64,000 bases of DNA from Ramazzottius varieornatus (Eukaryota > Animalia > Tardigrada), in assembly GCA_001949185.1 (NCBI GenBank), contig BDGG01000005.1, positions 2,891,972-2,955,971 on the forward strand, read 5' to 3'. Positions 29,481-55,537 of the stretch are shown piece after piece. Each line of letters starts with the position of its first letter. The first letter of the stretch is position 1. The position numbers and the translations under genes were made by a program. Under the pieces are notes generated by a model that worked only from the letters and a program-made list of their open reading frames with translations, had not been told where the DNA came from and ran no database searches.

Positions 29481-29969
29481 CGCAGTTCAAACCTGTTCAA
29501 GGTCCGACGGAGGACACATTACGGAAACGTCCATACCATAAATGGCGTATGCGGAACTTTCACATGGGAGTCCGAGACATGATGTCAAAGTGATGAAATG
29601 GTAGATTTATTTTGATCCTTTCCCTACAGGTACACGGTGCATTGAGAGATCCGGAAGACCTATGCTGTCGAAAATACAGTAGTCTGATGTTTTTCTATTT
29701 AACAAAACCATCACATGCACTCTTTTCCGATACTCAGCACTGCTAAAACAACACTCGGTACTACCGTTGCTGTTGTCTAATCAGTCAAAGATTGCTACTT
29801 AACGTGTTTCTTTTGCATTGCAGAATGTGGACAGGAAAGTTCAAAACAGGATGGGAGACCAAGGTCGTAACCCAGATGCGGGAGGCAATGAAGCTGTGGT
29901 TGTTGATGGCATGAGTGTCAGCCGCGCTGCAGTACTGCATAACGTGCGCAGGTTTAGCGTTGCACACGG

Positions 29970-30712
29970 CGGCGTTGTATTTGGTTTTACTCCCAAAATT
30001 ACTTACTGTAGTGCTACCAAATTATCGCGCACTGAACCACGCGATGAGTCATCGCCGCCCAGTGTGATCAGATGTTATCAGTTCAGCCTCGTGAACAAAT
30101 CACTCCCACGGTTTTCAGTTTCAGCTCCCATATATCTGTCCTACTCCGATGAATTTAGTTTTACTCTCGTTTAAAGGCGTTTTACTCTCCCGAATTTCAG
30201 TTTTACTCCCGGGATCCAATTCCAGTCCAAGAATAATCCAGATCTATTGTTTGCAGAAATATGTTAGTCTTTTGAATCTGAATGTTAGTTGTGACCTTTA
30301 AATTTCAGTTCGAAGCAGTAAGTTTCAGTCTTTACAAAACCTTCGAAGACCTAACTTAATCCCGGCCACGGCCGCATTGTCTTCAAAATCTTTGTTGCTT
30401 TTGAGGGTTTTCAGTCATTGGCTTTGACTTTTGAATCTTGTCCTTTCAGTTTTACTCCCGAGATTTCTGGTTTTTTGTCTTGCGTATCAGTTTTTCTCCG
30501 ATGAGTGAAAATTTTACTCTCGGTCATTGTAGTCTATGGCTTTTGTCTTTTCGTCTCGGCATTTTCATAGTTTTACTCTAGAGCATTTTAGTTTTACCCC
30601 CAGCTTTTCTATTTTACTCCCGACAGTTACGGTTTTACTCTCCAGAGTAAAACTGTAACTGAAGAACAGAGTAAACTGATTTTACTCTAGAGTATAAGTA
30701 AATACAACACTG
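29970..30712. mobile_element. hAT-type MITE with TTTTACTC repeats
   Basis: TIR cggcgttgtattt / aaatacaacactg; 8-bp TSD gcacacgg / acacacag (6/8); many (T)TTTACTC motifs. Confidence 0.7.
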
Positions 30713-31032
30713 ACACACAGCCTGAGTAAGGCCAGATTTCAGCCGAAACCTCGAAGAGAAACGAAAGACCACGTCTGAGTGAGGCTATTCAGGAAGATCT
30801 GCAGAAAGGTGCCAAAGCTCGACCTACAGCCATGAAGCACGAAGTCGGCTACTATGGAATTAGGTACTGTACAAGCTTATTCGGCTGGGCCACTGGCAGG
30901 CGAACAAGCGAAACGTCAAACAGAAAACTCAGGACAATGCAGTAGGCGCAGTTCTGGATGATAAATTGACCGTCAGGGCAGTGTCGAAGCAGTATGGACT
31001 CCAGCACTGTACAATCAGCAAAGAGATTATTA

Positions 31033-34000
31033 TCAGGTGCGGAAGTATGACTTGTTACTTCCCCGACGAAGATTTCCAAAAAAGTTTCCTGACTGCCAAG
31101 CTCGGTATTTTTGATCGGGTTATCCACCCATCCTATCACGGTACTTCACTCATTTTTCCGGCAGCGAATGCATGCCTTTACTGTAGGAGCATAGGGGAAG
31201 AGAAAAGATAAACTCCCCACAGCCATTTTTCGCAGCCTCTCTGGAGGAGATTGTTTTTCACGTAGGGGGAGCTCTGAGTTTTCGACGTGGTGATAATCCT
31301 GTAGTACCAGGTCCTCTCTTCCTGATGTGTGAAGGAGTTTCCCGTTCCGCCTTCTGCAGTTTTGCGGAAGTGTTCTGTTCAATGTGTACTCTAAAGCCAA
31401 CATGCAACATTGGTGCTTTGAGTCGACTGAACAATTTCGTTTAGTGAACGGCAACTTTCCTCATCATTCTTTTGCGTACCAGAGAGGTCTAGTCACCGGC
31501 TACCGTTATGCCGGGCGGAAAGATTTCGCAGCGGTCTAGACTTTAGAATTGTAATCAGACAGTAGCCACAATTTTCCTTTGGTGCCGCTCACGATTCGAA
31601 ATTTCCCACACGGCTTCCGCTCTTTCGAAACATTCCGATTTTTGCTTCAGACCGTTCTACAGAGCCCACTTATCATGGCTGGCAACAATGTGATCTGAGA
31701 TCGGTTCGCTCTCGTTCAGAACCGCGAGGGTAAATAGAGGCAAAACCTTGCGTTATCTGTAAGGTGCGCGAGGTAAACGAGGGTATAATGATAGTAATAA
31801 CCGCTTTACTGTTCTATGAGCTCACGAAGTCGAGCGAATGAAGAGCAATGTTTTAAAAAAAAGAGTGGCTAGAGCGCCGTAGAAAAAGATCATAATAGGA
31901 AAGCACCTAGAAAAAATACAAAATGTCCAAATTTACACAATCAACAAGCGGTGGTCAAGATGGTCCTTAGACCATTTCAGAGCTGAAAAGTTAAGAGACT
32001 TTAGATATTTTTTAGATGAGCCAATAGTAAGCAGATTTGTGGCCGAAGGACTAAACAAAGGGTCTTTCAACAAGTTCATCGCGATGTAGGCGAAGGACGA
32101 CAGCGTGGTGTCGAGAAGGGTGCCAGAAGCTGGGGCGATGCTGCCTGGCGCGAGGACAAACTCCTTGGACTGCGTTCTTGATCTCCCTGGCAGCTCCTTC
32201 TTCATGATGTGGCTTCCCCCTACAGAGACACCTGCTCTGATTTTATAAGCATTAATTAATTTACCTTCGAGTCGTCTTCGCCAGAGAGGAAGCCACTGAA
32301 CTTCCGCCAGATGCTGCCGATACTGGATGAGGTCGGTGTCGTGACTGTCTGTTGTTTCCATCTTTCTGAGTCTGATGCTGCGGAGAAACTTCTTCTGGAT
32401 TTTTTCCAGCTGCCGTCGGAGACCGTTCGCCGAAACAGACCATGCCGACGAGGCATAATCCATGACTGACCGCACGATACTCTTGAACAGGAGTTGCTTG
32501 ACCGAGCCGAAGCAGCGAGGGAAGTATGCGTTGATAGCCTACAACCTCTTCCTGCATTGTGCTGTCACCTTATCGACCTGGGCGGTCCAGTCAAGTCGGC
32601 TAGAGTATGTCACGCCGAAACATTCCCCCTCATTCTCGGTAGGTTTCGGATCACTCATAAACTTGTACGACCCACCTGGAATCCCCGTTTTCTTTTTCTT
32701 GTTCGAGATCCGGAGGTGCTGGGACTTTCTGGAATTGATGTCTAGCCCAGCATTTCTTCACCGCACCGCAATGTTGTCCAGGTCTTCTTGTAGGGAACGA
32801 CAGTCATCTTCACTGCTTACTGTTCGATGGAGGACGACAGCATCGGCATACTGGAGAACTGTCGACTTGACACGGGTAGAAAGACTGTTGGCTGCAACCG
32901 TAAAGAATGTCGGACCAAGGACTGATCCCTGTGGAACTCCAGACTTCACAGGCTGATCATCGGAGAGGTATCCGTCGACCATCACTCGCTGGCTTCAGCC
33001 ACGGAGGTAGTCCGAAAACAGAGCCAGTAGCCGACCAGTAACTCCATGCTTGAAAAGACTGTCAACAATTACGTCATGCGGAATTCGGTCGAAAGCTTTC
33101 GTACAGTCCAACAGGATGACGTCGGCCTCCTTCCTCTGCAGCAAGACTTGGGAGAAGTGGTGAGACATCTGGGCTAGCTGGATCTCTGTCGACCTTTGCT
33201 TCCTGAAACCATACTGAGAGTCAGACAACAACGTATTCTGGTACAGGTAGTTGCTCAGATGATCGGCAAGGATCTTCTCGAAGAGTTTGGACAAGGGTGG
33301 GAGGAGCGAGATTGGACGAAAGGCGGAGCCTCCTTTCTTCGGTATCGGGACGGCGTCAGCCTTCTTCCACACCGTAGGGAACTGTCCAGTTTGGATGATG
33401 AGGTTGGACAGTCTTGACGGGGGGTGAACGATGGCAGTACCTGCAACTCTGAGGAGACGGTTGGTGATGAGAGATGACCCAGCTGCTTTGTTGACGTCCA
33501 ACTTCTTGACGATGGTTAGGATGGCAGTAGTCGTTATCAGCAGGTCTAGACATCGGGGCGAAATTGCAGGCTCCATCAGACGGACAGGCAGAGGTGGCAG
33601 ATGGGTCTTGCAGTGGACGGGGCAGTCGACATACTCATCGGCGAAGGTCTTGGGGATGAATTCGGCCTTATCTTGCGGATGGACCAGATATCGATCATCG
33701 CTGCCTAGAACAGGAATCGGTGGGATCGAACTGCAGACGGTGTTCTTCTTAACATACTTCCAGACTGCGGTTGGATTTCTTCCTGGAGGATCAACCTCTT
33801 CTGCGCTTCCAATGCTTTCCACGCTGTCTAATCAGCTGGGTCCTTTGTCCTTCGCCATTTTTGATATGCGCCTCTGCACTTTCGTAGGCACCCAACTACC
33901 GTAGCCGAAAGGGAAGGACGAAGAAGGCGTCGGGAACCAACCGTCCTGAACTGGAAGCAGCTTGACGCACCTGGAAGAAACTTCTCCTGAAAGACATAAA

Positions 34001-34700
34001 CCACGACGTCAGATTTACACTGTACATCAAACATGCCGTTCCAATCAACTGGAGCCAGCATTCTGCGGAACTCAGTGGATATGTCGTCATCCACTTTCCA
34101 CTGTTTTCTGCTCTTTACGACGAATTTCGGAGTCATCAACATCAGAAAGAACTCTAGCCCATGGTGATCTTTAGGTGCTGCCGGTGGCGTGATGGTCCTC
34201 ACGTTGCGTATGAAACCGAGCTGCGAAACGAAGACAAGGTCCAGCGATGAACAGCTTTTCCCTCGTTCTCTGGTAATCTACCTAACTTTCTGCCATAGAC
34301 GAAATTCACTCTGTAGCGACAACAGGTCTCGTTCTCTTTCCGAGGATTCACTAGCTTTGTCTGACCAGGAAATGTTGGGGCAGTTGAAATCGCCCAACAT
34401 AAGGATGTTCCGTCTCAGATGTGGAGGAATCCGTTCCATCGAGGTGCGAAGCTTACTGAAAACTTCGCTGTCGTAGCCTGGCGCGTAGACGACTCCAATG
34501 AGTAATGCGCAGTTCATGCGCAGAGCAATCACTTTAACCCAAAGAACCTCTAGCCCAACCACTTCGTACTCTACCATCCTCCTAATTTAGAACTCTTTCC
34601 TGATTACAAGAGCTACTCCACCTTCTGTACTTTTCTGGCAGCCATCCTTTTCTGATGTTGACGTTTTCCCAGGGGTAACAAGTCATACTACCGCACCTGA
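31033..34700. mobile_element. Mariner-like element (TIR-bounded, TA TSD) hosting a LINE
   Basis: 26-bp TIR TCAGGTGCGG(A/T)AGTATGACTTGTTAC at both ends with 1 mismatch, flanked by TA at 31031-32 and 34701-02. The TIR start resembles Mos1-type TCAGGTG...AAGTATGA. Confidence 0.8.
31788..34630 (-). mobile_element. CR1/L2-like LINE, 5'-truncated, degenerate ORF2 (APE endonuclease + RT)
   Basis: GGVAL, LEVLWV, IGVVYAP, MLGDFNCPNISW (endonuclease); FRPISLL, QYGFR, LDCTKAFD, GVPQGSVLGP, YADA (mutated YADD); (TTA)n-like 3' tail at about 31788-31800. Confidence 0.9.
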
Positions 34701-35637
34701 TAGCAGCCGCGGTTACCGCTTCGAGCCCCGCTCTGGAAAATACGTCAAGCAGCCTTCTGCCAAGCCATTCACTCATCCAGCCCTCAGCGATGCAGAGTTT
34801 CAATCGAGCGACGAAAATTCACCAGCGCTCGAAGTGGTTAGGACCGATGATGATGTCACAGCACCTTTCTTGCAGGACGAAACCGTTAAATTGACCAACG
34901 CAGCATCTCCAGAGATCGAAAGAATTATGGAGTACCGGGTGCAGCGACAGTATTTGGTCCAGTGGAAGGGTGAGACGGAAGAACAAGCCACTTGGGTGGA
35001 CGAAGATGTCTTTCCCGAGCTGACCAGAATGTCGGCCTAGTAAGTCGGCTCGATGAAGTTTCCGCTGTCTTAGTACAGTCTACTCTTATTTTGCGCGAAC
35101 ATTACTATTTTCTTCCGAGAAAATCATAAGTTTTTCGGAGCTTAATTGGGGACCGATATTCAGGCCGAGCGAGCGAGGCCTTTATAAGTCCCACGATTTC
35201 AGTGCTAATCGGAATGTTCAGTCATGGCTTTGCCGCAAACTCTATTCTGTTAAAAGATACACCAGTTAATCGGATATTACTAAATGCTCGATCAGCCTTC
35301 CCAGTGGTCAGGACCACTATCTAGTTTACACATGCTTTCCTATTCACCACTGTTTTTTCTTATGCAAAGCTCGCATTTGACGATGCAATTATGACCAACG
35401 TTGACACGCGGAAGTACTGTAAGGTCTACGGCAGGTCAAAGCTCGGATCCCCTGAGCCTACTAATGTTTAGGTCGCTAAGAAAAAAACACCCCTCGTATT
35501 CGAAACTGATCGCATACAGTGAATGATTTCGAAGATAACCGATCTCCCAAATTTTCAAGCCGGCGCAAATAGTTACTTGAACGCTTCGGTTAGTGATTCC
35601 CAAACCCCGAAACAAATTTTCCACTTTTGCATCAAGT

Positions 35638-36414
35638 ATGGATCGACAAGATGCGCTGACTCGTCTGCGAAGTCTTCACGACCTCGAACGATGCCTCGGT
35701 CACCCGGCCTGCCAACTCAGCGACTGCGACAAAGGCAAGATCCTCATTGTGATCCTGGAAGCTAAAAGAGTCTGCGAGGGGCTGGCCCGCGGCTGCTGCC
35801 AGGGCCAGTGTCCGGACCAGCGCCAGATGGGCCCCTGGTGCCAACGATGTCCTCCCAACAGCTGCGAATGTCCGCCTGGATACAAAGGTGATCGTGGACA
35901 ACAGCCACAGCAGCAGTATAACTACGGACAACAACAAGGCTACGGAAACCAGTACCAGAAACCACAGCAAGGGCATCGCTCTTTCTATAACAACGGTAAC
36001 TCAAACCAGGGTAACTTTTGCGGTGGACGAGGACCCATGGAGCAGCAGAATTCCATGATGGATTTTGGGCAAGGCTTCGGACACAATCAAGATGTGCAGG
36101 AGTACAATCGTGGTCGTCACGGCACACGTGGTTTCGGTGGCGACTTCCATCCTGGTCAGATGGACGGACGTTATAGCAACGAAGGCAACAACCGGGACCA
36201 TAACAGCTACGGAGGAAGCTACAACGGGAGTCAGTACAATGAGCGACTGCATGAACTTGAGTCGAACGTGTCTAGCATGACTCTACACCAAGGGATGAAC
36301 AACCAGCGTCGCAAAACCAGGGACGCAACAGCAGTATGGCTCATTTGGTCGCGGAAAATAACCAACAGCAATGGTCAGTCTCGCAGTCAGTCCAGCCTTT
36401 TCCGCTCTTGTTGA
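35638..36414 (+). CDS. Cys-rich plus Q/N/G/Y-rich low-complexity ORF (possibly gag-derived)
   Basis: Open frame of about 258 aa from ATG 35638, with CxxC motifs followed by GQQPQQQYNYGQQQGYGNQY... and RGG-like stretches. Confidence 0.4.
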   Translation: MDRQDALTRLRSLHDLERCLGHPACQLSDCDKGKILIVILEAKRVCEGLARGCCQGQCPDQRQMGPWCQRCPPNSCECPPGYKGDRGQQPQQQYNYGQQQGYGNQYQKPQQGHRSFYNNGNSNQGNFCGGRGPMEQQNSMMDFGQGFGHNQDVQEYNRGRHGTRGFGGDFHPGQMDGRYSNEGNNRDHNSYGGSYNGSQYNERLHELESNVSSMTLHQGMNNQRRKTRDATAVWLIWSRKITNSNGQSRSQSSLFRSC

Positions 36415-36808
36415 TCAGTCGCAACGGCTTTTTGGCCCTGGACATGTTGTCTTCGATACTGTATATTCACCTCGTCATTTTTTCCGGTTCAAATTTGTAC
36501 GAGATGAAGATTTCTGAGTTCGCCAGCCTTATAACAAGTAAGACATTTGAAGGCCTATACTCCAGTAACAGGTGGCTAACTCAACAACCATTACCTCGTA
36601 CCGACACTTCCAAGGAGTTCAAGTTACCTTTATCCAACCGCTCAGGAAGCGTTTTCACGGCTTGCTACTTGACCAAAACTTACGATATTCGTCCATCTGA
36701 CTATGCGAATCTGCGGAATTCCAGAACTGAAATTAAATGAAAACAAAAAGAAAGAACAAAAAAATTGAAGCAAGAACCAAAAAGGATTTGTGTATCATGG
36801 TAGACTGT

Positions 36809-43683: not shown

Positions 43684-45306
43684 ATGCTGTTTCGTAGGTA
43701 CCTTGGACTGCTGTGGATCAAGACAATGTCGACTTCGCTGCAGCCTCCAGCGAGTATCCGTGGGATGAAAGAGCTGGACCGCAACGCCTTCCAGAAAACC
43801 ATCGACATTCCTTGCCTTCGCACTCCTGCTCGGGCGTTACTTTTCCCGCCGGTGACAGCCACCTTGAGGAAATCGCTGCTCCGCCTACCAAAGATTAAGG
43901 CGTTTCAACCAGCTGAAACAGACGGGGAGAAGATAGTCTTACTTGATCCGGAGAAAGCACCGGCATGGGATAGCATCGATGGCCGAGATGTCCTTGAGCA
44001 GCATGGCTTGTCAGCTGAAGCCTTCCACCGGAGACAGATCTGCCTCTCCTATGCCAACTTTTCTCCCCATGAGATCCTGGTAGCTGTCCTCGGGGATTCC
44101 GCACCGAATGTGGCTGGCTTCAGTTCCGTTGGACATATCATACACCTGAACTTGAGGAGTGAACACGAACCTTACAAGAAGATAATCGGTCAGTCAACGG
44201 AAAAGCAAAATCAAAATTCAAAATTCTTTTCAAGCGGCACATGACGTCTGTAATCGCCCTACGTTACATCTGTGGTGCGTATCAGCACGCTAACGTCATT
44301 GCGGCTGGTTGCGGGTGCGCCAATCAACAATCAAGCCAGGGTCTGGCTTACTAACTCGGCTTCGATTGATTGTTGATGAGCTCGTCTGTCAGTCATTTCT
44401 TCCTTATGAGTTTCTCTGTTGACACGTTGGCTGCTGTTTTCAGGTCAAGTCCTCGTCGACAAGATTCCCACGTGTCGGACTGTCATCAACAAGATCAACC
44501 AGATCGAGAATGAGTACCGGAACATCAACTACGAAATCCTAGCTGGCGTCGACGATCTAACGACAGTGGTAAAAGAAAGCAACTGTTCCTTCCACCTCGA
44601 CTACAGTCAAGTCTACTGGAATCCTCGTCTGAGCACAGAACATGAACGACTCGTCAAAGAAGTGCCCTCTAACTGTGTCCTGTACGATGTCTTTGCCGGC
44701 ATCGGTCCTTTCGCCATTCCGGCAGCCAAGAAGAAATGCGAGGTCCTGGCCAACGACCTGAATCCCGTTTCTTACGAGTACTTGCTCAAAAACATCACAG
44801 TTAATAAAGTAAAAGATAGGGTACAGGCGTTCAATATGGATGGAAGAGATTTTATTCATGGACCTATGAAAGAAGATTTGTTGAGAAGGTGGAAAGACAA
44901 ACCGGAAGTCGTGACGCATGTTGTGATGAATCTGCCAGCGTTAGCTGCGGATTTTGTGGATGCGTTCAGAGAATTGTTCCACGACGTGAATCTCCCTGTT
45001 CCTGCTGGGCTTCCTGTTGTTCATGTTTATGCTTTTGAGAAGAATGAAGATAAAGACGGATTGCTGGAAAGAGTGAGGACCAATTTGAGATATGATTTGA
45101 AGAAAGAAGCTGTGACAAGGTTCTTCGTGAGACAAGTGGCGCCGTCTAAAGACATGGTGCGGTTACGATTCGAGCTTCCGTGGGAGCTCTTGACAGCAAA
45201 GCCCAAGAACTCAGTCATGGAATCTTCTTCTGAATATTTGACGAATGATTTGACATCTGTGGAACCAAATGTAAAGCGGCGGAAAGTTTTAGACGGTAAC
45301 CCATAA
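43684..45306 (+). CDS. TRMT5: tRNA (guanine(37)-N1)-methyltransferase (exons 43684-44188, 44444-45306)
   Basis: Motifs GFSSVGHIIHLNLR, VYWNPRLSTEH, DVFAGIGPFAIPAAKK, ANDLNP and HVVMNLP; the phase-1 GT-AG intron joins IIG|QVLVDK. Confidence 0.95.
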
Positions 45307-45500
45307 AATCCTACTAGATGTGACAGATTTCTATACGTGATAAATCGAGCAAACGATAATGGGTTCGCTGGCGGTATACAGATTCAACTCTACGCACAGT
45401 AGTTCTTAATCCGACCCATAACGACAAAAAAAATACAGGAAATACTTGGATAAACCATAAACAGAGTATAACCACCAAGATTGACTCAAGTTCTCCGACA

Positions 45501-46061
45501 TCACAAGTTCTCTTGAACTTCTGCTTGAAGACCTATTGGTCGACCCTTGATAATGTTCTCGTCCTCCCAGCTGTTGTGTTCCTCCGAATATCCGTGCCAT
45601 TTGATGAGATACTGGCGCCTTTCCCTGCATCCGACGATCCTCTCGATGATTTGATCTTCCGCCGAAGCCATATCTGTTTTCTCTACCGACGCGCCACCTC
45701 TGTCGAGTTCGTCCAATACGCTGCACGAATTTCCTGATTCATCGGCGTCTTTCTTGGTGGTCGAATCAGCTTCGGCTCCTCCGATGGTAGATATCACGAA
45801 GCCCTCGGATGTTAACGGGATATCGACGCCGGCATTTGAGACCGCAGCAATTGCCGAAGTATCCGGCTTGTAATGTTGTCCATCAGCCTTAAAAAATATC
45901 AACGATATCCTCTCCTCCCCCGGGATGATAGTTTGCCGAAGAGCGTGGCAGGTTGCTTGGTGGAAAAGAGCCTGCATTTCTAGGCGGTTTTGATTCATCG
46001 CTGACCTTTTCAAGCTATCGCCTTCACCGGCAGACCTTTGTAGTGATTTGGTCCTCCCCAT
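45501..46061 (-). CDS. Small single-exon chromodomain protein (186 aa)
   Basis: C-terminal IIERIVGCRERRQYLIKWHGYSEEHNSWEDENII is a chromodomain; no clear HTH in the N-terminal part. Confidence 0.7.
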   Translation of the reverse strand: MGRTKSLQRSAGEGDSLKRSAMNQNRLEMQALFHQATCHALRQTIIPGEERISLIFFKADGQHYKPDTSAIAAVSNAGVDIPLTSEGFVISTIGGAEADSTTKKDADESGNSCSVLDELDRGGASVEKTDMASAEDQIIERIVGCRERRQYLIKWHGYSEEHNSWEDENIIKGRPIGLQAEVQENL

Positions 46062-46965
46062 GTCAGACCAAAACGGCGAAGAGTGAGATCAGTCGTCTAT
46101 GACTGGTGGTCAACATGAATGGTCAACACGAAGGGTCTAAATGAAGGAAGGCCAGAAAATGAGCTGTTCGTTCGAAGAACCTAACAACCCCAATTCTCGT
46201 AAAGGCCGCAGGAACGGATCGCCACTCAGCGACTGTAGTAGACTTTGGAAGAAACAAGTGCAAAAGTTCGGATCCGGAATAGTTGAAGATCCGGTTCAAG
46301 TTTAGCGAAGGCTGTAAATGCGGACTTGTATAATTGTCGTATCCATTCAATGGCCATAACCCGGTAAAACGGTCGAACAACCACACAGTAGGACTTCACA
46401 TCGAAATTGTTACTCGATCGTAATACTTCTGGTACCATTCAAACAATACACGCGCCGGGACTAATTATGGGCCGCGAGAAAATTTTTGGTCACCGGCCGA
46501 AAGCGGCATCTCCCGGCTAGACTGACAATCAATCGAAGCGTTGCCGCTTTCGGCCGGTGACCAGAAACATTTTTCCCGACCAATATCCAGAACTGATGCT
46601 GTTCCCCCGAACAGTGATATCCACCGAGCGAAAACCCACAACTCAATGCCATAATGTCATATCTCACCGAAACCGACTTACTTGCTTCCTCCCTTTCAAG
46701 AATCTTGCCATTTTACGTACCTCGTACAGTGAAACATCATGACATTGTTCGCACGTTTTCGCGGCTTCAACTGTTGGTCACTGTCGCTTTAGTTTGAAGT
46801 GAAAGTATCAGATTCTCCCAACAAGAGCAGAATAGCTTCGCTAAAATGATAGTAAACTGTGGCACTGCCGCACAAAAAGCCGCAAAAACTTCGGTCGCCC
46901 AGTAGGTGACCGAGGTTTAGTGGGCGACGTCTACATAACTCAAAAGCCACCCAAATAGCGTACTT

Positions 46966-47749
46966 TTACTGTTCTTCCCTGCGGGGTCTGCAAAGCCCAT
47001 TGAAGATGTCTTCGTCTACCCACGTCGCTTCCTCTTTACTCTCGCCCTGCCACCTGACCAGAAAATGACGCTTGGTTCGCACATCCAATACCGCTTCCAC
47101 TTCCGGCTCTTCTGGCAGCGTCTCGGACAACGCAGAGTTCCCAATCTGGCGTAGCACAGGTTCTGCTTGGGAATCAGCTTCCAAGGAAGTACCTTCAGTT
47201 AAGCTCTCGTTCGCCATTTCTTCTATGCGTAGCTTGAGTGCTGAAGGATCAACCTTGTAAATTTTCGCCGTCTCCTCGATGTTAATTCCAAGGATCATCA
47301 CAGCGTCCACTGCATCCCTTGTGTACGGAACTTCTACCAGCTTCGGCGATTTATCGGGTCGAGATCTGCAGACGAACAAGCTACTGACCAGTCGAAACGC
47401 TTTCCTCGAAAGTGGAAAAAGTCATATGAATAAAAATGAGAGAAAAACGGAAATATCGCAATAAGCTGATTCGAAAATTCGATACCAGACTTGCTAGTTG
47501 CTACTGTCGTCGTTAACCTTACCGTTTGTGCAGGTTGTTAGATGGAGCAGTATCGGCTGAGATTTCCCGACGTTTGCTGTCACGGGGCCGCCTCGACTTG
47601 GCCACACGGATCGCACTGATTTCCGGTGACTGCGAAGGGGATCGTACACCATCGGTGAGGCTGGAACTGGGTTCGCTGGATGAGAGGTTCGACGAATAAC
47701 CATCGGAGCGGGCGGAATGCCTGAACAACGACTGAGCATGTGAAGCCAT
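46966..47749 (-). CDS. HTH(psq-like)x1-chromodomain protein, about 208 aa (exons 47749-47523, 47365-46966)
   Basis: Ser-rich exon 1 ends NNLHKR at a phase-2 GT. Exon 2 has HTH DAVDAVMILGINIEETAKIYKVDPSALKLRI and chromodomain EVEAVLDVRTKRHFLVRWQGESKEEATWVDEDIF. Confidence 0.75.
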
Positions 47750-48283
47750 GCGTGCTCATCGGAAGTTCCCTTTGTTTCAAAGGATCAGTCCAAAGTATGG
47801 AGAATACTCCTGCTTCGGTCAACCACCACACCCACCGAACGAAATGTATGACATGACGTCCAACTTGTCTTTCTTTCTAGTTACAAAGCGGGCTCTTTGC
47901 AAATGGAACGGGTTTTCTAAACAAAGAGCACTTCCGGAACAGCCCTGAATAGGCCTCTGTTTTGGAAATCCGCTTCTGCGTCAGTATATGTACTATTGTC
48001 ACTACGGTGAACGACCCGGTGTACTTGTAGCCGAACAAAGATAGTAAATCGCGCAGTCGCGTGTGCGCAGTCAACGAGAAATTTGTTGTTGGTTTATTCG
48101 TCTTCTTTTGAATATGCTACGAATTTTGAAGGAAGTGCAAGGATAACTTAATCAGTGGCATATTGTGGGTGGCGTGTCAGCGTATCAGGACACGAGCTCG
48201 TTAATACAAGAACTTGTTCGGTAACATGTTACGAACGTATGTAAACAAAATGAGAAAAGTTTGACGGTTATTCTGGACGACCT

Positions 48284-49519
48284 TCACTGAACGTGCAAAT
48301 TGGCAAGTCCCAAGAAGACGTCTTCATCAACCCAGGTTGCTTCTTCTTCGCATTGCCACCTGACCAAGTACTGCCGCTTGACCCGAGTATCGACCATTCT
48401 TTCAGTTTCTTCCGGTTCCGGAGTGCTCGGTTTCTGTTCTTCGGTCGCTTCCTCTTATTTGGACGGCTGACGGAGTACGACCCGTGCTTTGTTTGTCTTC
48501 GGTCCATTCTCCTTCTTCTCCATCTTCTGGTGTCTGGCTGGTTGTTACAGGAGATTCCGTTTGCTTGTCATCAGAGCGCATTTGTGCTTCAACCCACTTT
48601 GCTGCAGGACCGGAGCCTCTGCACTTGTAGCCCAGCTCGCGTAGACGATTGTAGACGCTCTCATAACCCACTTTGTGGGCTGTCGCCGCGGACGTGGCGG
48701 TCGTTTTTTGCTCAACAACCTCGCGGACAGCGGCTTCCAGGTTCTCTCTGTTTCGCCTGTCAAGAAACTGAACGCCCTGGTCGATCAGCGCGCATCTTAA
48801 TGCGACTGGTTGGACTTTGTGTAGTTTTGCGCTGGCGCAGAAACAAAAGGAGTGACTCAAAAGGAGTGACAACGCACTCCTTTTGAAATGACATCGTTGA
48901 CAGCCTGTCGTAGTGATTCTGCTTTTCTCGGATCGATCTTGACCGTTCTGTAAACAGTCACCACGATCTGGCCGCATTAATCTCAACGTATGTAAGGCAT
49001 TTCTTTTCATGTTAGTTACCGTCTGCACGCTCGGGATTTCTTCACAGTGGCCACCGCGCCTTTCTCCAAAAGTACCTGTTCAAGTTCTGCCAACGTGAGT
49101 TGGTACTCACCCTGGGCACGCCTCAATTCTTGCTTCCTGTTAATGACGGCATCTGCTGCAGCATCCAAGGCTTTACTGCAAACAATCACAACGGGAATGC
49201 ACAACATTAACACAGAAATTTGTTATCAATGACTTTTCATTTCGCGAACACAGGAAAACATGTTAGAGGATGAAGTTGTACGAAATAATGCACATCTTAC
49301 CGCTTTTCATCGTCAACAAGCGGCATAAATGTTGATCTCCGCCCTGCTGGACGACTCGTTGGTGCGCTTCCCGGTTCTTGCACCAGGTCGCTTACAAGGA
49401 GAAGGCTCGACGCTCCTGTTGCCAGAAGACTCCTGGCCAGAATCACTAAGGCAGTCATATTTGTCAGACGAACTGCTGCTGGATGCCCATATCGCATCTG
49501 CAGAAACGTCCCGCGCCAT
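48284..49519 (-). pseudogene. HTHx3-chromodomain paralog with about 3 frameshifts
   Basis: Same exon structure as the 54.3-55.5 kb gene (DDEKR|gt; KALDAAADAVINRKQELRRAQGEYQLTLAELEQVLLEKGAV...RR|gt). HTH2 is disrupted at about 48845-48886; HTH3 reads NLEAAVREVVEQKTTATSAATAHKVGY. The chromodomain ETERMVDTRVKRQYLVRWQCEEEATWVDEDVFLGL lies in another frame. Confidence 0.75.
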
Positions 49520-51036
49520 TACTGTCGAATAAATTTTGCGAGCTGGAAATCACGATTTTCTTGTGGCACGAGGAGGGAGGCCTAACTTTTCTAACGAGAA
49601 TACTTTGTTACGCCAAGTTCTCAAGGTAGCGCTGCTCACTGCGAATCCACACTGTAGCCAGCTGACGACTGAGCAGAAGTTGGCAAAGTTTTAGCCAGTC
49701 AGCATTCGCGATTCACTTTGGGCCTTGATTCAATGATTGACGAGTTTACGACAGAACTTCTGCATGTTTTCGTGACAGTTACAGTTGTCGCCGTATCTCC
49801 CTGTAGGGTGGATCAGGTCCTGCTTCAGAGTCTGTCCACGCTACAGGATGCAGCCAGAAGCTCATACCTCATTTGAGAGAGGCGGAGAGGAGAATAAGTG
49901 GGGCTATTGCATGCAGTTTCGCTTCAACAAATCGTGGTTTAATTCTCTTCCGATGACGTCTTGCGTCACCGGAAGATAAACTGTCATTTAAGTCAGGCAT
50001 ATGTCTGTTTCGTCACACTTGCTACTTACGGTTCTGCGCTCGACATCTTCGGGCTACAGTTTGATACCTGGACAGCTTCTACTCCACCATCGTGAACCGA
50101 GATACAAGGTAATCATCATTCTCAATGAGATACCGAGTGCCGCAGTCTGTCACTGGATACCAGCTGAGCAGCGTTACAACGATAACTTCGGGAAGTTGTA
50201 GAGCTCGTTGCATTTGTGGCAACACATCTCGCACCCATGATAGATGAGTAAGGTAGATTCCGCAGGAGGGAAGGACAGAAAACAAAGGAAGATGTTGCGA
50301 GCGAGAGATTACTCAAGACATAGTAAACTCTTAGCCGTTCCGATTTTCAGTAGAAAACAGAAGAAAATTGAATCGGGACACCGGGACAGGCCGTCATATC
50401 CGTGCGATTTCTACTTGGTCTGGCCTATATGTGGTTTAGTGGCTTTGCTTGCTCTGCCCTCTGCAGAAAGTGTTCTCCCTAATGTCAGACTCCATTTTGA
50501 AAATGCGAATTTCAATTGAGACTCAAAAAGTCATATCGGAACAACACTGCTCTTCACGAATGTCTCCCGTCACGATCTGGTCGATCTCCCGTCGATTTTC
50601 AGTTCTGTCTGGCTCGTTATTCGTCGGTTTGGCCAGTTAGCAAAGAAAGGTCTCGCTTCTCGTACCTATGAGAACTGATGGCACCATGTATGTTTCGCCA
50701 TGTAATTTAGGTGTTCGGGCGTTCGGCCAGTGGGGATCCTCACGGCATCTGCTTCTTGTTCCATTGCAGTTACACGTAGCACTACCAGCCACCGGGAGCG
50801 GTGTGGTGGTGATGGAAGCTTGGAAGTACCGATTTGATGGAACGCTCGCTGAAAAGGACGGAAAATGTAAAGTAAGATGCGGAGGTACGGTATGGTGCAT
50901 ACATAATATTCGGTGCAGAGTTCTCAATATGGCGAAAGATAGCGCAAGCGTGACGCCTGCTTGTGAAAAAAAGAAACCGCCATAGACTTTCTCCATGCCA
51001 TGACTTAGGGTCAAGCTCTGGTACTGTAAAACAAAA

Positions 51037-52082
51037 ATGGCTTGTCATTCGTCGCTGCTGGCTCTGCCATTTCTGCGTAGTGTTAGTGGTGAGTTTACCC
51101 AGCAGCAGCAGCTGAAATTAGGGTAGAAGACAATGCCTGTTGATACCTGTGTTGATTATGTATGCCTTTGACATCGCTTTTACAGGTATGACACAAAATC
51201 TGGGACCTCTGCGCAGGTATTGCGCTCTTTCCTTCATGGAGTCTGAATCCCTGTGCACTTTTCGACAATTTTCTCGATTAGACCGACCAACCAAAACTAC
51301 AAATTTTCGTGCCAATCAGTTATCGGAATCGTTGGTGAGCGTGGGTTGTTGCTGACTTTAATACTTTCGTGGTCGGCCAGCGATCATGAAGAGCGGAGAT
51401 TTTTCTATACTCCCGATAATTTTGGGTAAAGTACTCAACATAGCTTTGATAACCTTCGTGATATCATGAATCTAAATCGGCGACGACTTATCTGCTTTCA
51501 ATTGTTGCATAGGTTTGTTGGGCAGCCGCATTCTGTCTGCATATCCACATGGCGCGATCGCACTTCCCACCGTTTTCGGATACGGTTTGTCGAGGCCGAC
51601 CACAGGTATTCGAGAATGGATCAACTGCTAAGTTGAGGAACTCGGTTTCGGCAGTTCAAGTTCTTGTTCTCTTTGTTTTAGGAGGCTACAACCAGCCGGA
51701 ACCCATCTACATTCAAATAACGAACGTAGTGAGCCCTCAGGTGACCAGCAATGCGGTGTCGAACGCCAATTCCGCCACCGGTCTACCGGGATCCCTCGGA
51801 AGTGGCACGAAGGATCTACGCGGTCTTTTGCTTCTGTCCGGGACCCAGCTGGTTCCTTATCAAGGAAGTGCAAAGGACGTCAAAGTGGTCCACATTCCCG
51901 TACTGGTACCCGTCAACGCTACGTCGCCAACAGGGAGCAGTCTCACTCCATCCAGTACCGTGACACCTCTTTCTCCAGCTTATCAACCTGTCCAACCATC
52001 AAGCAGCAAAGTGGGCAACAGCCTGCCTGCACAGTCAGAAATGACCACAAAGAAGAAAGCATGGACTTTTCCCTCGAAGTAG
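51037..52082 (+). CDS. Putative small secreted S/T/P-rich protein (exons 51037-51088, 51513-51605, 51682-52082)
   Basis: Three exons join in frame via phase-1 GT-AG introns; weak signal-peptide-like N-terminus; low-complexity body. Confidence 0.45.
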
Positions 52083-52146
52083 GGCACGTCAGCCATCACT
52101 AGGTCCGTGTGAAGAAGCAACTTGAAGCGGCTTGTGTACGCTCGGC

Positions 52147-53088
52147 CAGGGTTGCTCCAATATGACTTTTTCGATTCTAATTGCAATTACGATTAATCGG
52201 AATACTTCGGGCGGCAACAATTTCAGTTATCTGAGACCCAGCTAAGCTGAATTTGCAATTACAATTAATCGGAATTCAGCTCGCATCAGCAATTGAAATT
52301 ATTTCAATTGTTGTGGTTCATTTTTGAGATTTGAATATTCCCGAAATATCGTGTTTTAAAGCGACTCAAGCCTATCGTTCCATAAGCGTGGAATGGATGT
52401 TGGATGTTTAGCTCAAAACATGTTGTACGCAAGGCGTCAAACACGGATGCGCTGATGGAAGCAGGTATTGTAATGCTTCCTGGACCCTTGCGCGTACGTC
52501 GTCGTACACGCGAAACATCCCTTAGGGTTTTGGTAGGTAAAAATATCGGGACCACGGTTGAACTTCGCGTCTACATCGATGCACCGCGCGTGATTCGCAA
52601 AACAAAACTGTAAGCCTCGTGCCTTTCTCCGCCGTGCGACATGCACATACGCACGCATGTTCGCCCAATCAAGCGCCAAAGACCGCCAGAAACTCCGAAG
52701 CCTGTTACACCCACGTGCATTTTACCGCGCTGTAGCGCGTAAATTTAAGACTTTAACTAGACACATTCTTCACTCTAATTAGCAATTACAAGTACTGTAA
52801 AAACCCGCTGCGTCCGCGCAATACGTCAGCGCATACGTGAAGCACAGACCCGGTCCGGTTTTACTGCCTGTCCAACCCCCCACGGCGGTGCATCGTCACG
52901 TACGTGTACGTACTGCGCGGATGCAGCGAGTTTTTACAGTACTTCCGTTTTCGGAATTCTAATAAAATTCTAATTAATATTGGAATTACCCAGCTTGGGA
53001 TTCCCAATTTCAGTTGTCATAGTGGAATTCAAAAACGGTCGTTTTCGGCCTTTTTCATCTATCAATTGTAATTATCGGAGCAACACTG
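52147..53088. mobile_element. hAT-like MITE with AATT-rich subterminal repeats
   Basis: TIR CAGGGTTGCTCC / GGAGCAACACTG (11/12); the direct repeat GCTCGGC lies near both ends (TSD register ambiguous). Confidence 0.65.
52795..52939. mobile_element. Small TA-flanked MITE nested in the hAT MITE
   Basis: ta|ctgtaaaaacccgctgcgtccgcgca ... tgcgcggatgcagcgagtttttacag|ta. Confidence 0.8.
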
Positions 53089-53103
53089 CCGGCTCGGCCT
53101 TAG

Positions 53104-53571
53104 ATAATAATAACCGCTTTATTGTTCAATGAGCTCACAAAGTCGAGCGAATAAAGAACAATGTTTGAAAAAGAGTGGCTAGAGCGCCGTAGAAAAAGAT
53201 CAAAATAGGCGAAAAGCACCTAGAAAAAATACAAAATGTCCAAATTTACACAATCAACAAGCGGTGGTCAAGATGGTCCTTAGACCATTTCAGAGCTGAA
53301 AAGTTAAGAGACTTCAGATATTTTTCAAATGAGCCAATAGTAAGCAGATCTGTGGCCGAAGGACTAAACAAAGGGTCTTTCAACAAATTCATCGCGATGT
53401 AGGCGAAGGACGACAGCGTGGTGTCGAGAAGGGTGCAAAAAGCTGGGGCGATGCTGCCTGGCGCGAGGACAAACTCCTTGGACTGCGTTCTCGATCTACC
53501 TGGCAGCTCCTTCTTCATGATGTGGCTTCCCCCTGCAAAGACACCTGCTCTGATTTTATGAGCATTAATCA
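53104..53571 (-). mobile_element. Second, heavily 5'-truncated copy of the CR1/L2-like LINE
   Basis: Near-identical to about 31791-32258, including the 3' UTR and (TTA)n tail. Confidence 0.95.
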
Positions 53572-54311
53572 ATATACCAGATACACAGTCCGCTCGCTCG
53601 AGATTCGTACATTGCCTTCAGAATTCATCTTAAGGTCCGCTATACACTGATCACACAGCATGCCAAGCTTAGGGCCAAAATTACATCACACATGCATTAC
53701 ACCGCACTTTAACTGGCGTGATCAAGTAATCAAGTCGCTTGTGTCCGACTGCGTGGTATGGCCAGCCGTATCGTTAACCTTGCATGATTTTCCCATCTTG
53801 AAATCAGAAAAACGTGTACGGATCTCGAGCGAGCGGACTGTACAGTACAATGTCAAAAATGCTGCCCTGCTCATGATCACGTGTCTTACAGCACCAATCA
53901 ATAGAGAGGCGTACCACGCGATCTTCTGCAGGGCAGTCTTTCTGGACAATGTAGTTTTTTCCACTATGATTCACCCAAATATTGTAACAATATTGTAATC
54001 TATCGAGCTGTGACGTGGGGAATTTTTTTGGCTAAAACACCTTCCACTTTGCAATGGAGTGATACTGTGGATAGCATGGAACTAGGTGGAGCAATATGTG
54101 GCATAAATAGGCAATATCTTCAAAAGTGAATATCAAATCGAGATTTCGAAGAAGACCGCTGTATGTCGGCAGAACCTTCAAAAAATCGGCGTGTACGTTT
54201 ACAAGAGCTTACGCCATTTTGCGCGAGAAGAAGGTCTGAAAACAGCGACGGATCTTGTAAACGTTCAGGAACGACGAATAAGTTCTTCACAAGAAACAGC
54301 TAGAGAAAACG

Positions 54312-55537
54312 TCATTTGATAGTCAGGTTGGAGAGTCCCAGGAAAACATCCTCGTCCACCCAGCTTGCTTCGGTCTCTCCCTGCCATTTCACCAAATACT
54401 GCCGCCTGGTTCGAACATCCACGATCCGCTCGATTTCCTCGGTAGCTTCTTGATCGAGAGACCTTTCCTCCCTAAGCTTGCCTTCCTTCTGCGCATGCGA
54501 CAGTGTATTCTCGTAAATGTTGTCGCTCCAGTCTTCCTTCTGGTTGCTCTCTGGTGTTTCGCTGGTAGCAGGTTGGTCTTTCTCGTTGACAGATCCACTT
54601 TGCGCTTTCATCCATTGTTGCGCTCCTCGAGGGCCTTGAGGGCCTTTCTGAACGCAACCCCGCTCCTGCAGACGATTTTTTAGTCGCCGATGACCCACTT
54701 TGTGTACCTGGGCGGCAGTGTTCGCGGAGAACCGGCCCTCCAGGACGTCACGAACAGCGGCTTCCAGGTTCCCTCGCACAAGCGGTGAAGGAGCCGGAAT
54801 ACCCCGTTCAATGAGTGCCCGTTTTATTCGGTGCTGGTGGATCTTGTGTTTGTGAGCGCTGGCCCGCATGGACATGCCTTTTGAAACGACATCATCGACT
54901 GCCGCCCACAATGTCTTATCATGCTGCGGTTTCCATGCTCTGGAAAAATAAGTCGTACAATAAATGCAGAACGACAATGGCAGCTAGCCCATTGATGCTT
55001 TTATATGGTGCCGTTCTAGTATTAGTACAGTGTAACAACTTTGTGCTGCGGTGCTTACCGTCGACCTCCTCTCGATCTGTTGACCGTTTCCACCGCGCCC
55101 TTTCCAAGCAGTGCTCGATCAAGCTCGATGAAGGTTAGTTCAAACTTTTCGCGAACGCATGTGGGTCTTTCTTTTCTCGTAAGAATAGCATCGACCGCGG
55201 CATCCAGAATTTCGCTACAGAACAGAAGACAGATCCAGACGAGTTAAGGGATAATCCTCGATATTTTTCGTTGCCTTAAGTGGTCAGATACCAAACGTAC
55301 GTCTTTCGTATCTCATACCTACCGTTTCGGGTCATTATTCAAGGTTGCGGACGAGGTCGCATTACTATCGGCATGCCCGCTGCTTGTTCCGGCGGCGCCA
55401 CTGTTGGTTCCGTAACTGACCTTCTCCGAGGTGCCCATACCAGACGTGGCGCAGTCTGTTTCCTGATCGCGGCTCTTGGTAAATTTGGCGGATGAATCGC
55501 AAGATGATGTTGCCTCCTTGTCTGAAATGTCCGCCAT
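54312..55537 (-). CDS. Intact HTH(psq-like)x3-chromodomain protein, 332 aa (exons 55537-55323, 55214-55059, 54939-54312)
   Basis: Exons total 999 nt, in frame through two phase-2 GT-AG introns. HTHs: ILDAAVDAILTRKERPTCVREKFELTFIELDRAL, LWAAVDDVVSKGMSMRASAHKHKIHQHRIKRAL, LEAAVRDVLEGRFSANTAAQVHKVGHRRLKNRL. Chromodomain: EIERIVDVRTRRQYLVKWQGETEASWVDEDVF. Confidence 0.8.

What the first reader, a model, noticed from the sequence alone, without database searches (positions are those of the whole stretch)
29824..55537. Clustered gene family fusing tandem pogo/pipsqueak-type HTH repeats to a C-terminal chromodomain
Seen in sequence: five loci share a C-terminal chromo motif (E-[IVT]-E-[RA]-[IVM]-x3-R-x2-R-[QH]-[YF]-L-[VI]-x-W...W-x-D-E). 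They are at 29.8-35.0 kb (+, pseudogene), 45.5-46.1, 47.0-47.7, 48.3-49.5 (pseudogene) and 54.3-55.5 kb (all -). Four carry 1-3 repeats of the pattern AV-x-[AD]-V...[GK]-x-S-x-R-x-A-A-x-x-[HY]-x-V...L-x-x-R-L. The three spliced minus-strand copies share a phase-2 intron right after an exon-1 'KR' (NNDPKR, DDEKR, NNLHKR). Established knowledge: this pattern is the HTH_psq DNA-binding fold of pipsqueak and pogo/CENP-B transposases; chromodomains are chromatin readers; fission-yeast CENP-B homologues recruit HDACs to silence Tf2 elements. Inference: this is a fast-evolving, birth-and-death family of sequence-specific chromatin adaptors with variable HTH number, loosely analogous to KRAB-ZNFs and possibly directed at transposon ends. 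I know of no described family with this architecture, but I could not search.
Basis: partly seen in the sequence, partly recalled or inferred. Interest (0 to 1): 0.9.

Follow-up and report, generated by a model that had tools for sequence, protein, structure and literature searches.

The report
Tardigrade Psq-HTH plus chromodomain gene family
The window, from the tardigrade Ramazzottius varieornatus, holds five of the 13 genomic copies of an expressed, undescribed host gene family that joins 0-4 pipsqueak-type DNA-binding repeats to a short, atypical C-terminal chromodomain; its function is unknown.

Summary
The window is Ramazzottius varieornatus scaffold C5. All five loci exist where stated.

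- **Domains:** Pfam HTH_psq and Chromo pass their curated cut-offs in several members. A profile built only from the family's C-termini hits only solved chromodomains (best CHD4, E 5e-9).
- **Family size:** the genome has exactly 13 loci, eight of them within about 186 kb on C5.
- **Not a transposon:** copies share no DNA outside coding sequence, and there are no TIRs, LTRs or transposase domains.
- **Expression:** RNA-derived contigs from four studies show the predicted GT..AG intron of the 208-aa gene.
- **Gene structure:** exon 1 ends in a split K-R codon (phase 2) in five copies. HTH1 sits on a phase 2-2 cassette exon.
- **Range:** an exhaustive profile search of 1.84 billion proteins found family-like sequences only in Ramazzottius, a near relative and three unnamed fragments.
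- **Atypical chromodomain:** it keeps one of three aromatic-cage residues, and has a shortened hairpin and a truncated helix, so canonical methyl-lysine reading is doubtful.

Sequence-specific chromatin adaptors aimed at transposons remains inference. First readers also noted the cage defect on this stretch (s1-805916) and family members elsewhere in this genome (s1-790153, s1-808356).

The parts
54312..55537 (-). Intact gene RvY_10888 (332 aa): exon 1 55323-55537, intron 55215-55322, exon 2 55059-55214, intron 54940-55058, exon 3 54312-54939 including the stop
   Evidence: The deposited protein P0001 maps exactly onto these exons. Runs guessed to be RNA hold 64-76% of the locus's sampled words.
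55059..55214 (-). HTH1 cassette exon (156 nt, phase 2-2), a divergent Psq-like repeat
   Evidence: Family HTH profile E 9e-4 at 55097-55216. Modelled as two helices at low pLDDT. Exon phases.
54801..54917 (-). HTH2 of RvY_10888
   Evidence: Three-helix bundle with pLDDT above 90. Family HTH profile 62 bits.
54657..54788 (-). HTH3 of RvY_10888, the repeat that carries the Pfam HTH_psq match
   Evidence: PF05225 30.1 bits against a cut-off of 20.4. pLDDT above 90. LCoR HTH (2cob) is the top structural row, Z 5.0.
54336..54440 (-). Chromo-like domain of RvY_10888
   Evidence: PF00385 15.6-16.3 bits. The family-only profile hits only solved chromodomains. AF2 core pLDDT 85-95.
46966..47749 (-). 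Intact gene RvY_10883 (208 aa): exon 1 47523-47749, intron 47366-47522 (157 nt, GT..AG), exon 2 46966-47365. One HTH at 47227-47313 and chromo at 46993-47106
   Evidence: The joint 47365/47523 is seen in contigs of 4 runs from 4 studies. The translation equals P0008. Chromo 22.7-23.5 bits.
45501..46061 (-). Intact single-exon gene (186 aa) with chromo only and no HTH; chromo at 45543-45647
   Evidence: PF00385 36.7 bits, above the 25.1 cut-off. Covered without joints by contigs of 4 runs. An 85%-identical orthologue, P0025, exists in a Logan assembly.
48087..49519 (-). Transcribed pseudogene. Introns 48948-49019 and 49176-49300. HTH relics at 49058-49177, 48774-48854 (broken) and 48630-48749. 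Chromo in another frame at 48287-48412
   Evidence: Frame breaks and a stop early in exon 3. A spliced 2460-nt contig in run X1 only, which runs on beyond 50200. HTH profile hits.
29818..35040 (+). Disrupted copy. HTH relics at 29890-29949 and 30930-31025 lie in different frames. The chromo ORF 34834-35040 is deposited only as the 117-aa RvY_10877
31790..34600 (-). Non-LTR retrotransposon (endonuclease plus reverse transcriptase) that interrupts the 29.8-35.0 kb copy. It is not a family member
   Evidence: RVT_1 59.4 bits and Exo_endo_phos_2 30.3 bits. Its tail 31790-32265 is 94% identical to 53103-53578.

Best explanation
This is a host gene family restricted, as far as the searches reach, to Ramazzottius. 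It has 13 loci, eight of them in a cluster of about 186 kb. Each protein has a disordered Ser/Thr-rich N-terminus that ends in a basic K-R, then 0-4 pipsqueak-type three-helix HTH modules, an acidic linker, and a C-terminal chromodomain about 40 residues long.

Shown: the family, its gene models, its expression, its domain homologies, that it is not a transposon, and purifying selection on the chromo core.

Inferred: the proteins are nuclear DNA-binding adaptors. The HTH modules contact DNA, as in Psq, LCoR and transposase DNA-binding domains. The number of modules is varied by a phase 2-2 cassette exon and by repeats inside the last exon. The conserved chromo-like end docks the protein on chromatin, nucleic acid or a partner protein without a methyl-lysine cage. 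CHD3/4 chromodomains, which bind nucleosomal DNA, are the nearest working precedent.
For: - Identity and models.
- HTH_psq above the Pfam cut-off in four members. HTH2 and HTH3 have pLDDT above 90. The solved Psq-type LCoR HTH ranks first both by structure (Z 5.0) and by the family HTH profile (E 0.015).
- Chromo above the cut-off in two members. The family-only profile hits 82 PDB sequences; all 60 shown are chromodomain proteins, best CHD4 at 5e-9, then CDYL and HP1. The AF2 core has pLDDT 85-95 with two strands and a short helix. Foldseek's list is dominated by chromo and chromoshadow entries.
- Discrete family: 13 chromo loci at 76-101 bits, then 42 bits. Strong HTH hits occur only beside these loci.
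- Expression and splicing.
- No shared flanks, TIRs or LTRs. Unrelated host genes lie between the copies.
- Chromo core dN/dS about 0.16 with saturated dS.
- Mi-2 chromodomains bind nucleosomal DNA and PAR (PMC3145624).
Against: - There is no experimental or localisation data.
- Both structural matches are statistically weak: Foldseek E above 1, no VIA Z of 2 or more for the chromo model, and HTH Z of 5 or less.
- The first AF2 run, with a shallow alignment, modelled the chromo region as a helix at low confidence.
- The family's third helix reads V-G-[HY]-x-x-L rather than the usual I-P-x-x-T-L of Psq domains.
- One intact member has no HTH at all.
- Three to five loci are dead or fragmentary.
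Confidence: 0.6

Rival explanations
1. The family arose by domestication. A pogo/Tigger-type transposase N-terminal HTH_psq module was captured, duplicated and fused to a chromodomain. It now acts on the ends of related transposons.
For: - HTH_psq is the first DNA-binding domain of pogo transposases (established knowledge).
- The genome has more than 120 HTH_psq matches, many in identical multi-copy form.
- A pogo-like HTH_psq fragment lies in this window at 8183-8596.
- An unnamed ENA protein, P0141, independently joins HTH_psq repeats to a terminal chromodomain.
Against: - The family HTH profile gives no hit at E of 1 or less on the window's pogo-like fragment.
- In the genome, that profile drops from 47-70 bits for family loci to 38 bits or less for every other HTH_psq locus.
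- No family member has an HTH_Tnp_Tc5 or DDE domain.
- No binding data exist.
Confidence: 0.25
2. The loci are internal ORFs of one transposon or retroelement family.
For: - The copies are clustered.
- Chromodomains at a protein's C-terminus, and loss of the first and third cage aromatics, are also seen in chromoviral integrases of group II (PMC3605345).
Against: - DNA similarity between copies is confined to coding sequence, with no TIRs or LTRs.
- There is no integrase, RT or DDE in any member.
- There are only 13 loci, with saturated synonymous divergence.
- Spliceosomal introns are conserved in position and phase.
- Host genes are interspersed.
Confidence: 0.03
3. The C-terminal module is not a chromatin or nucleic-acid contact. 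It is instead a protein-protein module of the chromoshadow type, for dimerisation or peptide docking, which assembles HTH proteins into homo- or heteromers.
For: - Several HP1 chromoshadow structures are among Foldseek's top rows, with the best TM of 0.47 for 3p7j_B.
- The extreme C-terminal tail is hydrophobic and strongly conserved.
- The cage is missing.
- The nearest non-family relative in the genome, the N-terminal domain of RvY_02419, has a faint Chromo_shadow hit.
Against: - Pfam and PDB profile matches are to chromo, not chromoshadow, domains.
- The helix that forms the chromoshadow dimer interface is truncated here.
Confidence: 0.2
4. The family is a decaying remnant without present function.
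For: - The 48.3 and 29.8-35.0 kb copies are broken.
- C5:2976898 has a frameshifted HTH2 and C10:922869 has a stop in its HTH relic and altered conserved residues.
Against: - At least eight loci have deposited intact ORFs.
- Two intact genes in the window are transcribed in four studies.
- The chromo core is under purifying selection.
- An orthologue at 85% identity keeps the full ORF.
Confidence: 0.08

Closest known systems
Pipsqueak (Psq) superfamily HTH proteins: Drosophila Psq, Dan, E93, human LCoR
   Same: They share Psq-type three-helix HTH modules, used in tandem as in Psq. HTH_psq passes the Pfam cut-off, and LCoR is the top structural and profile match. Psq binds GAGA DNA and recruits Polycomb (PMC6754745).
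   Different: There is no BTB or other partner domain. Helix 3 lacks the usual I-P-x-x-T-L. A chromodomain closes the protein. The family is found only in Ramazzottius.
pogo/Tigger transposases and their domesticated CENP-B, Abp1 and Cbh relatives
   Same: They have an N-terminal HTH_psq DNA-binding module.
   Different: There is no second HTH_Tnp_Tc5 domain, no DDE domain and no TIRs. The family HTH profile does not recognise the pogo-like fragment in the window.
HP1, CBX and CDY chromodomains (methyl-lysine readers)
   Same: They are homologous by profile, with E of 2e-8 to 1e-6, and share the invariant W of the second strand.
   Different: The first and third cage aromatics are absent. The third is present only in the 45.5 kb copy and is lost in its orthologue. 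The hairpin between strands 1 and 2 is 3 residues shorter. The C-terminal helix is cut to about 10 residues and there is no chromoshadow domain.
CHD3/4 (Mi-2) chromodomains
   Same: They are the best profile match in the PDB, at 5e-9, with the same R-x-R-Q-[FY]-x-V-K-W-Q-G core. Cage independence is from my own knowledge. They bind nucleosomal DNA and PAR (PMC3145624).
   Different: In CHD proteins they come as a tandem pair inside a large ATPase. Here there is a single terminal copy in a small protein.
Group II chromodomains of chromoviral (Ty3/gypsy) integrases
   Same: They sit at the C-terminus and have lost the first and third cage aromatics (PMC3605345).
   Different: There is no integrase, RT or LTR here. 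Group II was reported only from plants (same paper). No sequence link was tested.
KRAB zinc-finger proteins (analogy only)
   Same: Both are clustered, lineage-specific arrays of modular DNA-binding repeats joined to one shared effector-type domain.
   Different: The domains are unrelated. There are only 13 loci with no recent duplicates, and no evidence of transposon targeting.

Membership tests
HTH_psq (PF05225) domain | Score at or above Pfam's gathering cut-off (20.4 bits) | tested here: met
   30.1 (RvY_10888), 23.2, 25.5 and 28.4 bits in four members. It is 16.4 bits or absent in the others.
HTH_psq (PF05225) domain | Compact three-helix helix-turn-helix fold | tested here: met
   HTH2 and HTH3 are modelled as three helices each with pLDDT above 90. 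The top structural row is LCoR HTH, Z 5.0, which is weak on that scale. HTH1 is modelled poorly.
HTH_psq (PF05225) domain | Sequence-specific DNA binding | not testable with these tools
   Needs EMSA, PBM or DAP-seq.
Chromodomain (PF00385) | Sequence homology to chromodomains | tested here: met
   36.7 and 27.1 bits, above the 25.1 cut-off, in two members and 14-23.5 bits in the others. The family-only profile hits only chromodomain chains in the PDB, best 5e-9.
Chromodomain (PF00385) | Three-stranded antiparallel sheet packed by a C-terminal helix | tested here: inconclusive
   AF2 with a bridging alignment gives two DSSP strands plus a 10-residue helix, core pLDDT 85-95. Foldseek's top rows are chromo or chromoshadow but with E above 1. 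VIA gives no Z of 2 or more. An earlier shallow-alignment model gave a helix.
Chromodomain (PF00385) | Aromatic cage of three residues for methyl-lysine | tested here: not met
   Only the middle W is conserved. The first position is E, P, S or D. The third is E or Q, except Y in the 45.5 kb copy, which is L in its orthologue.
pogo / CENP-B-like transposase or derivative | HTH_Tnp_Tc5 second HTH and DDE_1 catalytic domain; terminal inverted repeats | tested here: not met
   No such Pfam hits in eight members. No TIRs or shared flanks.
Pipsqueak proper (BTB plus Psq repeats) | N-terminal BTB/POZ domain with tandem Psq repeats | tested here: not met
   Tandem repeats are present, but no BTB hit.
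HP1 family | N-terminal chromodomain plus C-terminal chromoshadow domain | tested here: not met
   There is a single C-terminal chromo-like domain and no Chromo_shadow hit in family members.
Chromovirus integrase chromodomain | Chromodomain fused to an rve integrase inside an LTR element | tested here: not met
   No rve or RT in members and no LTRs.

The most novel reading that the evidence does not exclude
The family is a tardigrade-lineage system for aiming one shared, cage-less chromodomain at many different DNA sequences. Cassette-exon and in-exon Psq HTH arrays would give each paralogue its own specificity, for example transposon ends, satellites or stress-response genes. The common C-terminal module would recruit one silencing or protective activity, or bind nucleosomal DNA or poly-ADP-ribose as Mi-2 chromodomains do. 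This would be a functional parallel to KRAB-ZNF proteins built from unrelated parts.
Probability: 0.15. Interest if true: 0.8.

Novelty: new variant of a known kind. Interest (0 to 1): 0.5.

Why it matters
Ramazzottius varieornatus is the model for extreme desiccation and radiation tolerance, and its known lineage-specific chromatin protein Dsup has drawn wide attention (my own knowledge). This is a second lineage-restricted set of predicted DNA- and chromatin-binding proteins. Its domain combination is absent from the literature searched, and it turned up outside Ramazzottius only once among the 150 best-scoring of 678 hits in a 1.84-billion-protein library, in one unnamed protein. It also offers a natural series with 0, 1, 2, 3 or 4 HTH modules on one conserved effector end. 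That series suits tests of how Psq modules combine in DNA recognition, and of what a chromodomain does once two of its three cage residues are gone. The proteins are deposited only as 'hypothetical' or 'Chromo domain-containing'. Recognising them as one family with defined gene models makes knock-out and binding experiments straightforward.

Tried and rejected
- **Word-index protein searches** found only the query and two paralogues. They say nothing about range.
- **Whole-protein Foldseek** gave no significant match because most of the model is disordered.
- **phmmer of HTH2-HTH3 against the PDB** found nothing meaningful.
- **VIA second look at the chromo model:** no Z of 2 or more.
- **ESM Atlas:** no hit by features, and only low-TM multi-HTH transposase-like clusters by structure.
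- **Homodimer of the 57-residue C-terminus by complex prediction:** no verdict (score 0.20, mark 0.32). This is not evidence either way.
- **Maximum-likelihood tree of the last exons:** unresolved, with long branches, so the order of duplications is not recoverable.
- **dN/dS between paralogues:** dS is saturated, so only 'purifying on the chromo core' can be said. The recognition helices were not analysed separately.
- **Strain differences in run X9** are too few to test selection: 3 of 9 and 7 of 11 changes are non-synonymous in the two family genes, and 4 of 4 in the neighbouring Trm5 exon.
- **Literature searches** for the architecture, the locus tags or a tardigrade chromo family found nothing relevant.
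- **Transposon-ORF reading:** rejected.
- **Joined spliced sequences:** Exons were searched by reference, and the full-length proteins used were the deposited ones returned by the tools (P0001, P0008). One script joined the two RNA-supported exons of the 47.0 kb gene, only to check the frame.
Full report
**Source and gene models.** The largest exon of the 54.3 kb copy matches, at 100%, 'hypothetical protein RvY_10888 [Ramazzottius varieornatus]', which UniRef names 'Chromo domain-containing protein'. The window is scaffold C5:2891972-2955971 of a 55.8 Mb assembly. The deposited 332-aa protein (P0001) maps onto three exons: 55537-55323, 55214-55059 and 54939-54312.

**The observation.** Three-frame reading confirms all five loci.
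- The C-terminal motif is present in each. The 45.5 kb copy departs at the first positions.
- Pfam Chromo reaches 36.7 bits (cut-off 25.1) in the 45.5 kb copy and 16-23.5 bits in the other three intact copies tested. HTH_psq reaches 27.4-30.1 bits (cut-off 20.4) in the 54.3 kb gene.
- A family HTH profile scanned over every open frame of the window hits only these loci. It finds two relics in the 29.8-35.0 kb copy, one repeat at 47.2 kb, three at 48.6-49.2 kb and three at 54.66-55.22 kb. It finds none in the 45.5 kb copy and none on the pogo-like fragment at 8.2 kb.
- The 48.3 kb copy is broken. Exon 3 runs into a stop inside HTH2, and the chromo segment lies in another frame.
- The 29.8-35.0 kb copy has its HTH relics in different frames. 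It is split by a non-LTR retrotransposon (endonuclease plus RT, minus strand, about 31.8-34.6 kb). The tail of that element recurs at 53103-53578 at 94% identity.

**Size and limits of the family.**
- The family-only chromo profile (A4) finds 13 loci at 76-101 bits in the genome. The next hit scores 42 bits.
- Eight loci lie on C5 between 2.881 and 3.067 Mb, two adjacent ones on C7, one on C10 and two on C14.
- The HTH profile (A5) gives 47-70 bits only next to these loci. It gives 38 bits or less at the many other HTH_psq sites of the genome (Pfam HTH_psq itself has more than 120 matches).
- Deposited proteins exist for at least nine loci, all 'hypothetical'. They carry 0 to 4 HTH repeats.

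**Not a transposon.**
- Self-comparison of the window shows similarity between copies only within coding sequence. No terminal inverted or long terminal repeats surround them.
- No member has a transposase, integrase or RT domain.
- Unrelated host genes lie between the copies: a TRM5/TYW2 methyltransferase and a predicted 666-aa ORF without a Pfam match; an inward-rectifier K channel C-terminal exon lies just beyond the last copy.
- Synonymous divergence between paralogues is saturated (dS of 0.94 or more, mostly above 1.3, or undefined). The protein tree is a star with long terminal branches. The duplications are therefore old.

**Expression and introns.** Contigs of four runs from four studies were laid on 44300-50200. 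The runs are guessed to be RNA, and the splice joints confirm that.
- All four skip 47366-47522.
- The 45.5 kb gene is covered without joints in all four runs.
- The 48.3 kb pseudogene is covered in one run only, by a 2460-nt contig that is spliced at 48948-49019 and 49176-49300 and runs on beyond 50200.
- The neighbouring Trm5 exon serves as a positive control.
- In RvY_10888, RvY_10883, RvY_10936 and RvY_12159, exon 1 ends AAA CG|GT. The intron splits the R of a terminal K-R after its second base. The 48.3 kb copy does the same.
- The next exon, which carries HTH1, is 156 or 150 nt and also ends in a split R. It is therefore a phase 2-2 cassette whose presence or absence leaves the frame intact. 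The two one-HTH genes lack it. This gives a simple mechanism for part of the variation in HTH number.

**Domains.**
- *HTH.* AF2 of RvY_10888 with a 15-row family alignment gives two three-helix bundles with pLDDT above 90 for HTH2 and HTH3, a poor HTH1, and disorder elsewhere. An all-against-all structural search puts the LCoR HTH (2cob), a Psq-type domain, first at Z 5.0. Resolvase, recombinase, Brinker and Pax HTH domains follow. These Z values are low in absolute terms. The family HTH profile also ranks LCoR first in the PDB (E 0.015).
- *Chromo homology.* The family-only profile matches 82 PDB sequences at E of 1 or less. All 60 shown are chromodomain proteins. CHD4 is best at 5e-9, followed by CDYL, CHD1 and HP1.
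- *Chromo fold.* With a bridging alignment, AF2 models the last 57 residues with core pLDDT of 85-95, two strands and a 10-residue helix. Foldseek's list is dominated by chromo and chromoshadow entries but with E above 1. The VIA second look reports nothing. Homology is therefore well supported by sequence. The fold is plausible but not demonstrated.
- *Departures from canonical chromodomains.* Alignment shows a 3-residue deletion in the first hairpin, loss of the first and third cage aromatics, and a protein end about 10 residues after the W-x-D-E motif. The only third-position aromatic, in the 45.5 kb copy, is L in an 85%-identical orthologue from a Logan assembly. The chromo core is nevertheless the best conserved part. 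Mean column identity is 49% against 28% for the whole last exon, and dN/dS is about 0.16.

**Range.** A profile of the last exon was scored against 1.84 billion cluster representatives, with HMMER reading every protein. Among the best 150, family-type sequences were limited to the following:
- the R. varieornatus paralogues;
- the Logan orthologue P0025;
- three short unnamed ENA fragments (P0038, P0068, P0099);
- the N-terminal domain of another R. varieornatus protein, RvY_02419, which has the same short hairpin.

All other hits were generic multi-chromodomain or multi-HTH_psq proteins. One unnamed ENA protein (P0141, 628 aa) independently joins HTH_psq repeats to a terminal, canonical-looking chromodomain. 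No Hypsibius member was recognised, but tardigrade genomes could not be searched directly.

**Interpretation.** The well-supported statement is that this is an expressed host gene family, restricted to one lineage, with a new combination of two known domains. The working model rests on what these domain families do elsewhere. In that model the HTH arrays bind DNA, and a conserved cage-less chromodomain provides a second contact.
- Psq binds GAGA DNA and recruits Polycomb (PMC6754745).
- Mi-2 chromodomains bind nucleosomal DNA and PAR rather than methyl-lysine (PMC3145624).
- The cage pattern also recalls group II chromoviral chromodomains (PMC3605345), but no retroelement features are present here.
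- A chromoshadow-like docking role is a live alternative. The one complex prediction gave no verdict.
- Targeting of transposon ends is untested and gets no support from the sequence comparisons made here.

**Earlier notes of the scan.** s1-805916 (degenerate cage and truncated C-terminus) agrees with what alignment A3 shows. s1-790153 and s1-808356 describe the C5:3.067 Mb and C7 members of the same family.

**Verdict.** It is undescribed in the literature that was searchable, and its function is unknown. It is a new variant of known kinds, of moderate interest.

Noticed in passing
window 8183-8596 (+): ORF with an HTH_psq match (20.5 bits, just over the cut-off) followed by sequence typical of the second HTH of pogo/CENP-B-type transposases. 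It is probably a pogo-like transposase fragment. The family HTH profile does not hit it.
   Followed up: partly
window 31790-34600 (-) and 53103-53578: A non-LTR retrotransposon (Exo_endo_phos_2 plus RVT_1) sits inside the 29.8-35.0 kb locus. Its 476-nt tail recurs at 94% identity near 53.1-53.6 kb, so the element family was active fairly recently.
   Followed up: partly
window 46466-46585 and 52790-52944: Two short palindromic (self-complementary) elements, MITE-like, lie between family copies. One run has a small contig that ends inside the first.
   Followed up: no
window 44443-46221: RNA-derived contigs run without a break from the Trm5/TYW2 gene (+) into the convergent 45.5 kb family gene (-). 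The 3' ends of the two transcripts therefore overlap or abut.
   Followed up: no
window 48087-50200 and beyond: The spliced contig of the 48.3 kb pseudogene continues more than 540 nt past 50200. The transcript starts far upstream of the family-type exon 1 and was seen in one of four runs only.
   Followed up: no
P0102 = RvY_02419, G000:C1:6732400-6732510: Another R. varieornatus protein (471 aa) has an N-terminal chromo-like domain with the same shortened hairpin (R-x-x-R-Q-F-L-V-K-W) and a canonical chromodomain at its C-terminus. It is the nearest non-family relative in the genome (42 bits) and a possible source of the family's chromo module.
   Followed up: partly
P0141 (unnamed ENA protein, 628 aa, 53 kb contig): A GC- and proline-rich protein from an unidentified eukaryote joins several HTH_psq/HTH_28 repeats to a terminal chromodomain that keeps a cage-type aromatic at the first position. 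This looks like an independent occurrence of the architecture.
   Followed up: partly
G000, many small contigs (e.g. C84, C86, C88, C95, C97, C136, C150): There are identical HTH_psq matches (31.0 bits each) on many short contigs and on C1, C2, C4, C5 and C9. This points to a multi-copy HTH_psq-bearing transposon family in this genome.
   Followed up: no
window 44443-47831, run X9: Contigs of one study differ from the reference at 1.6-1.8% of coding positions in the two family genes, against 0.46% in the Trm5 exon. In RvY_10883, 8 of 11 changes fall in the disordered exon 1.
   Followed up: partly
window 56050-56661 (-): An exon encodes an inward-rectifier potassium channel C-terminal domain (IRK_C, 62.8 bits) just beyond the last family copy.
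   Followed up: no
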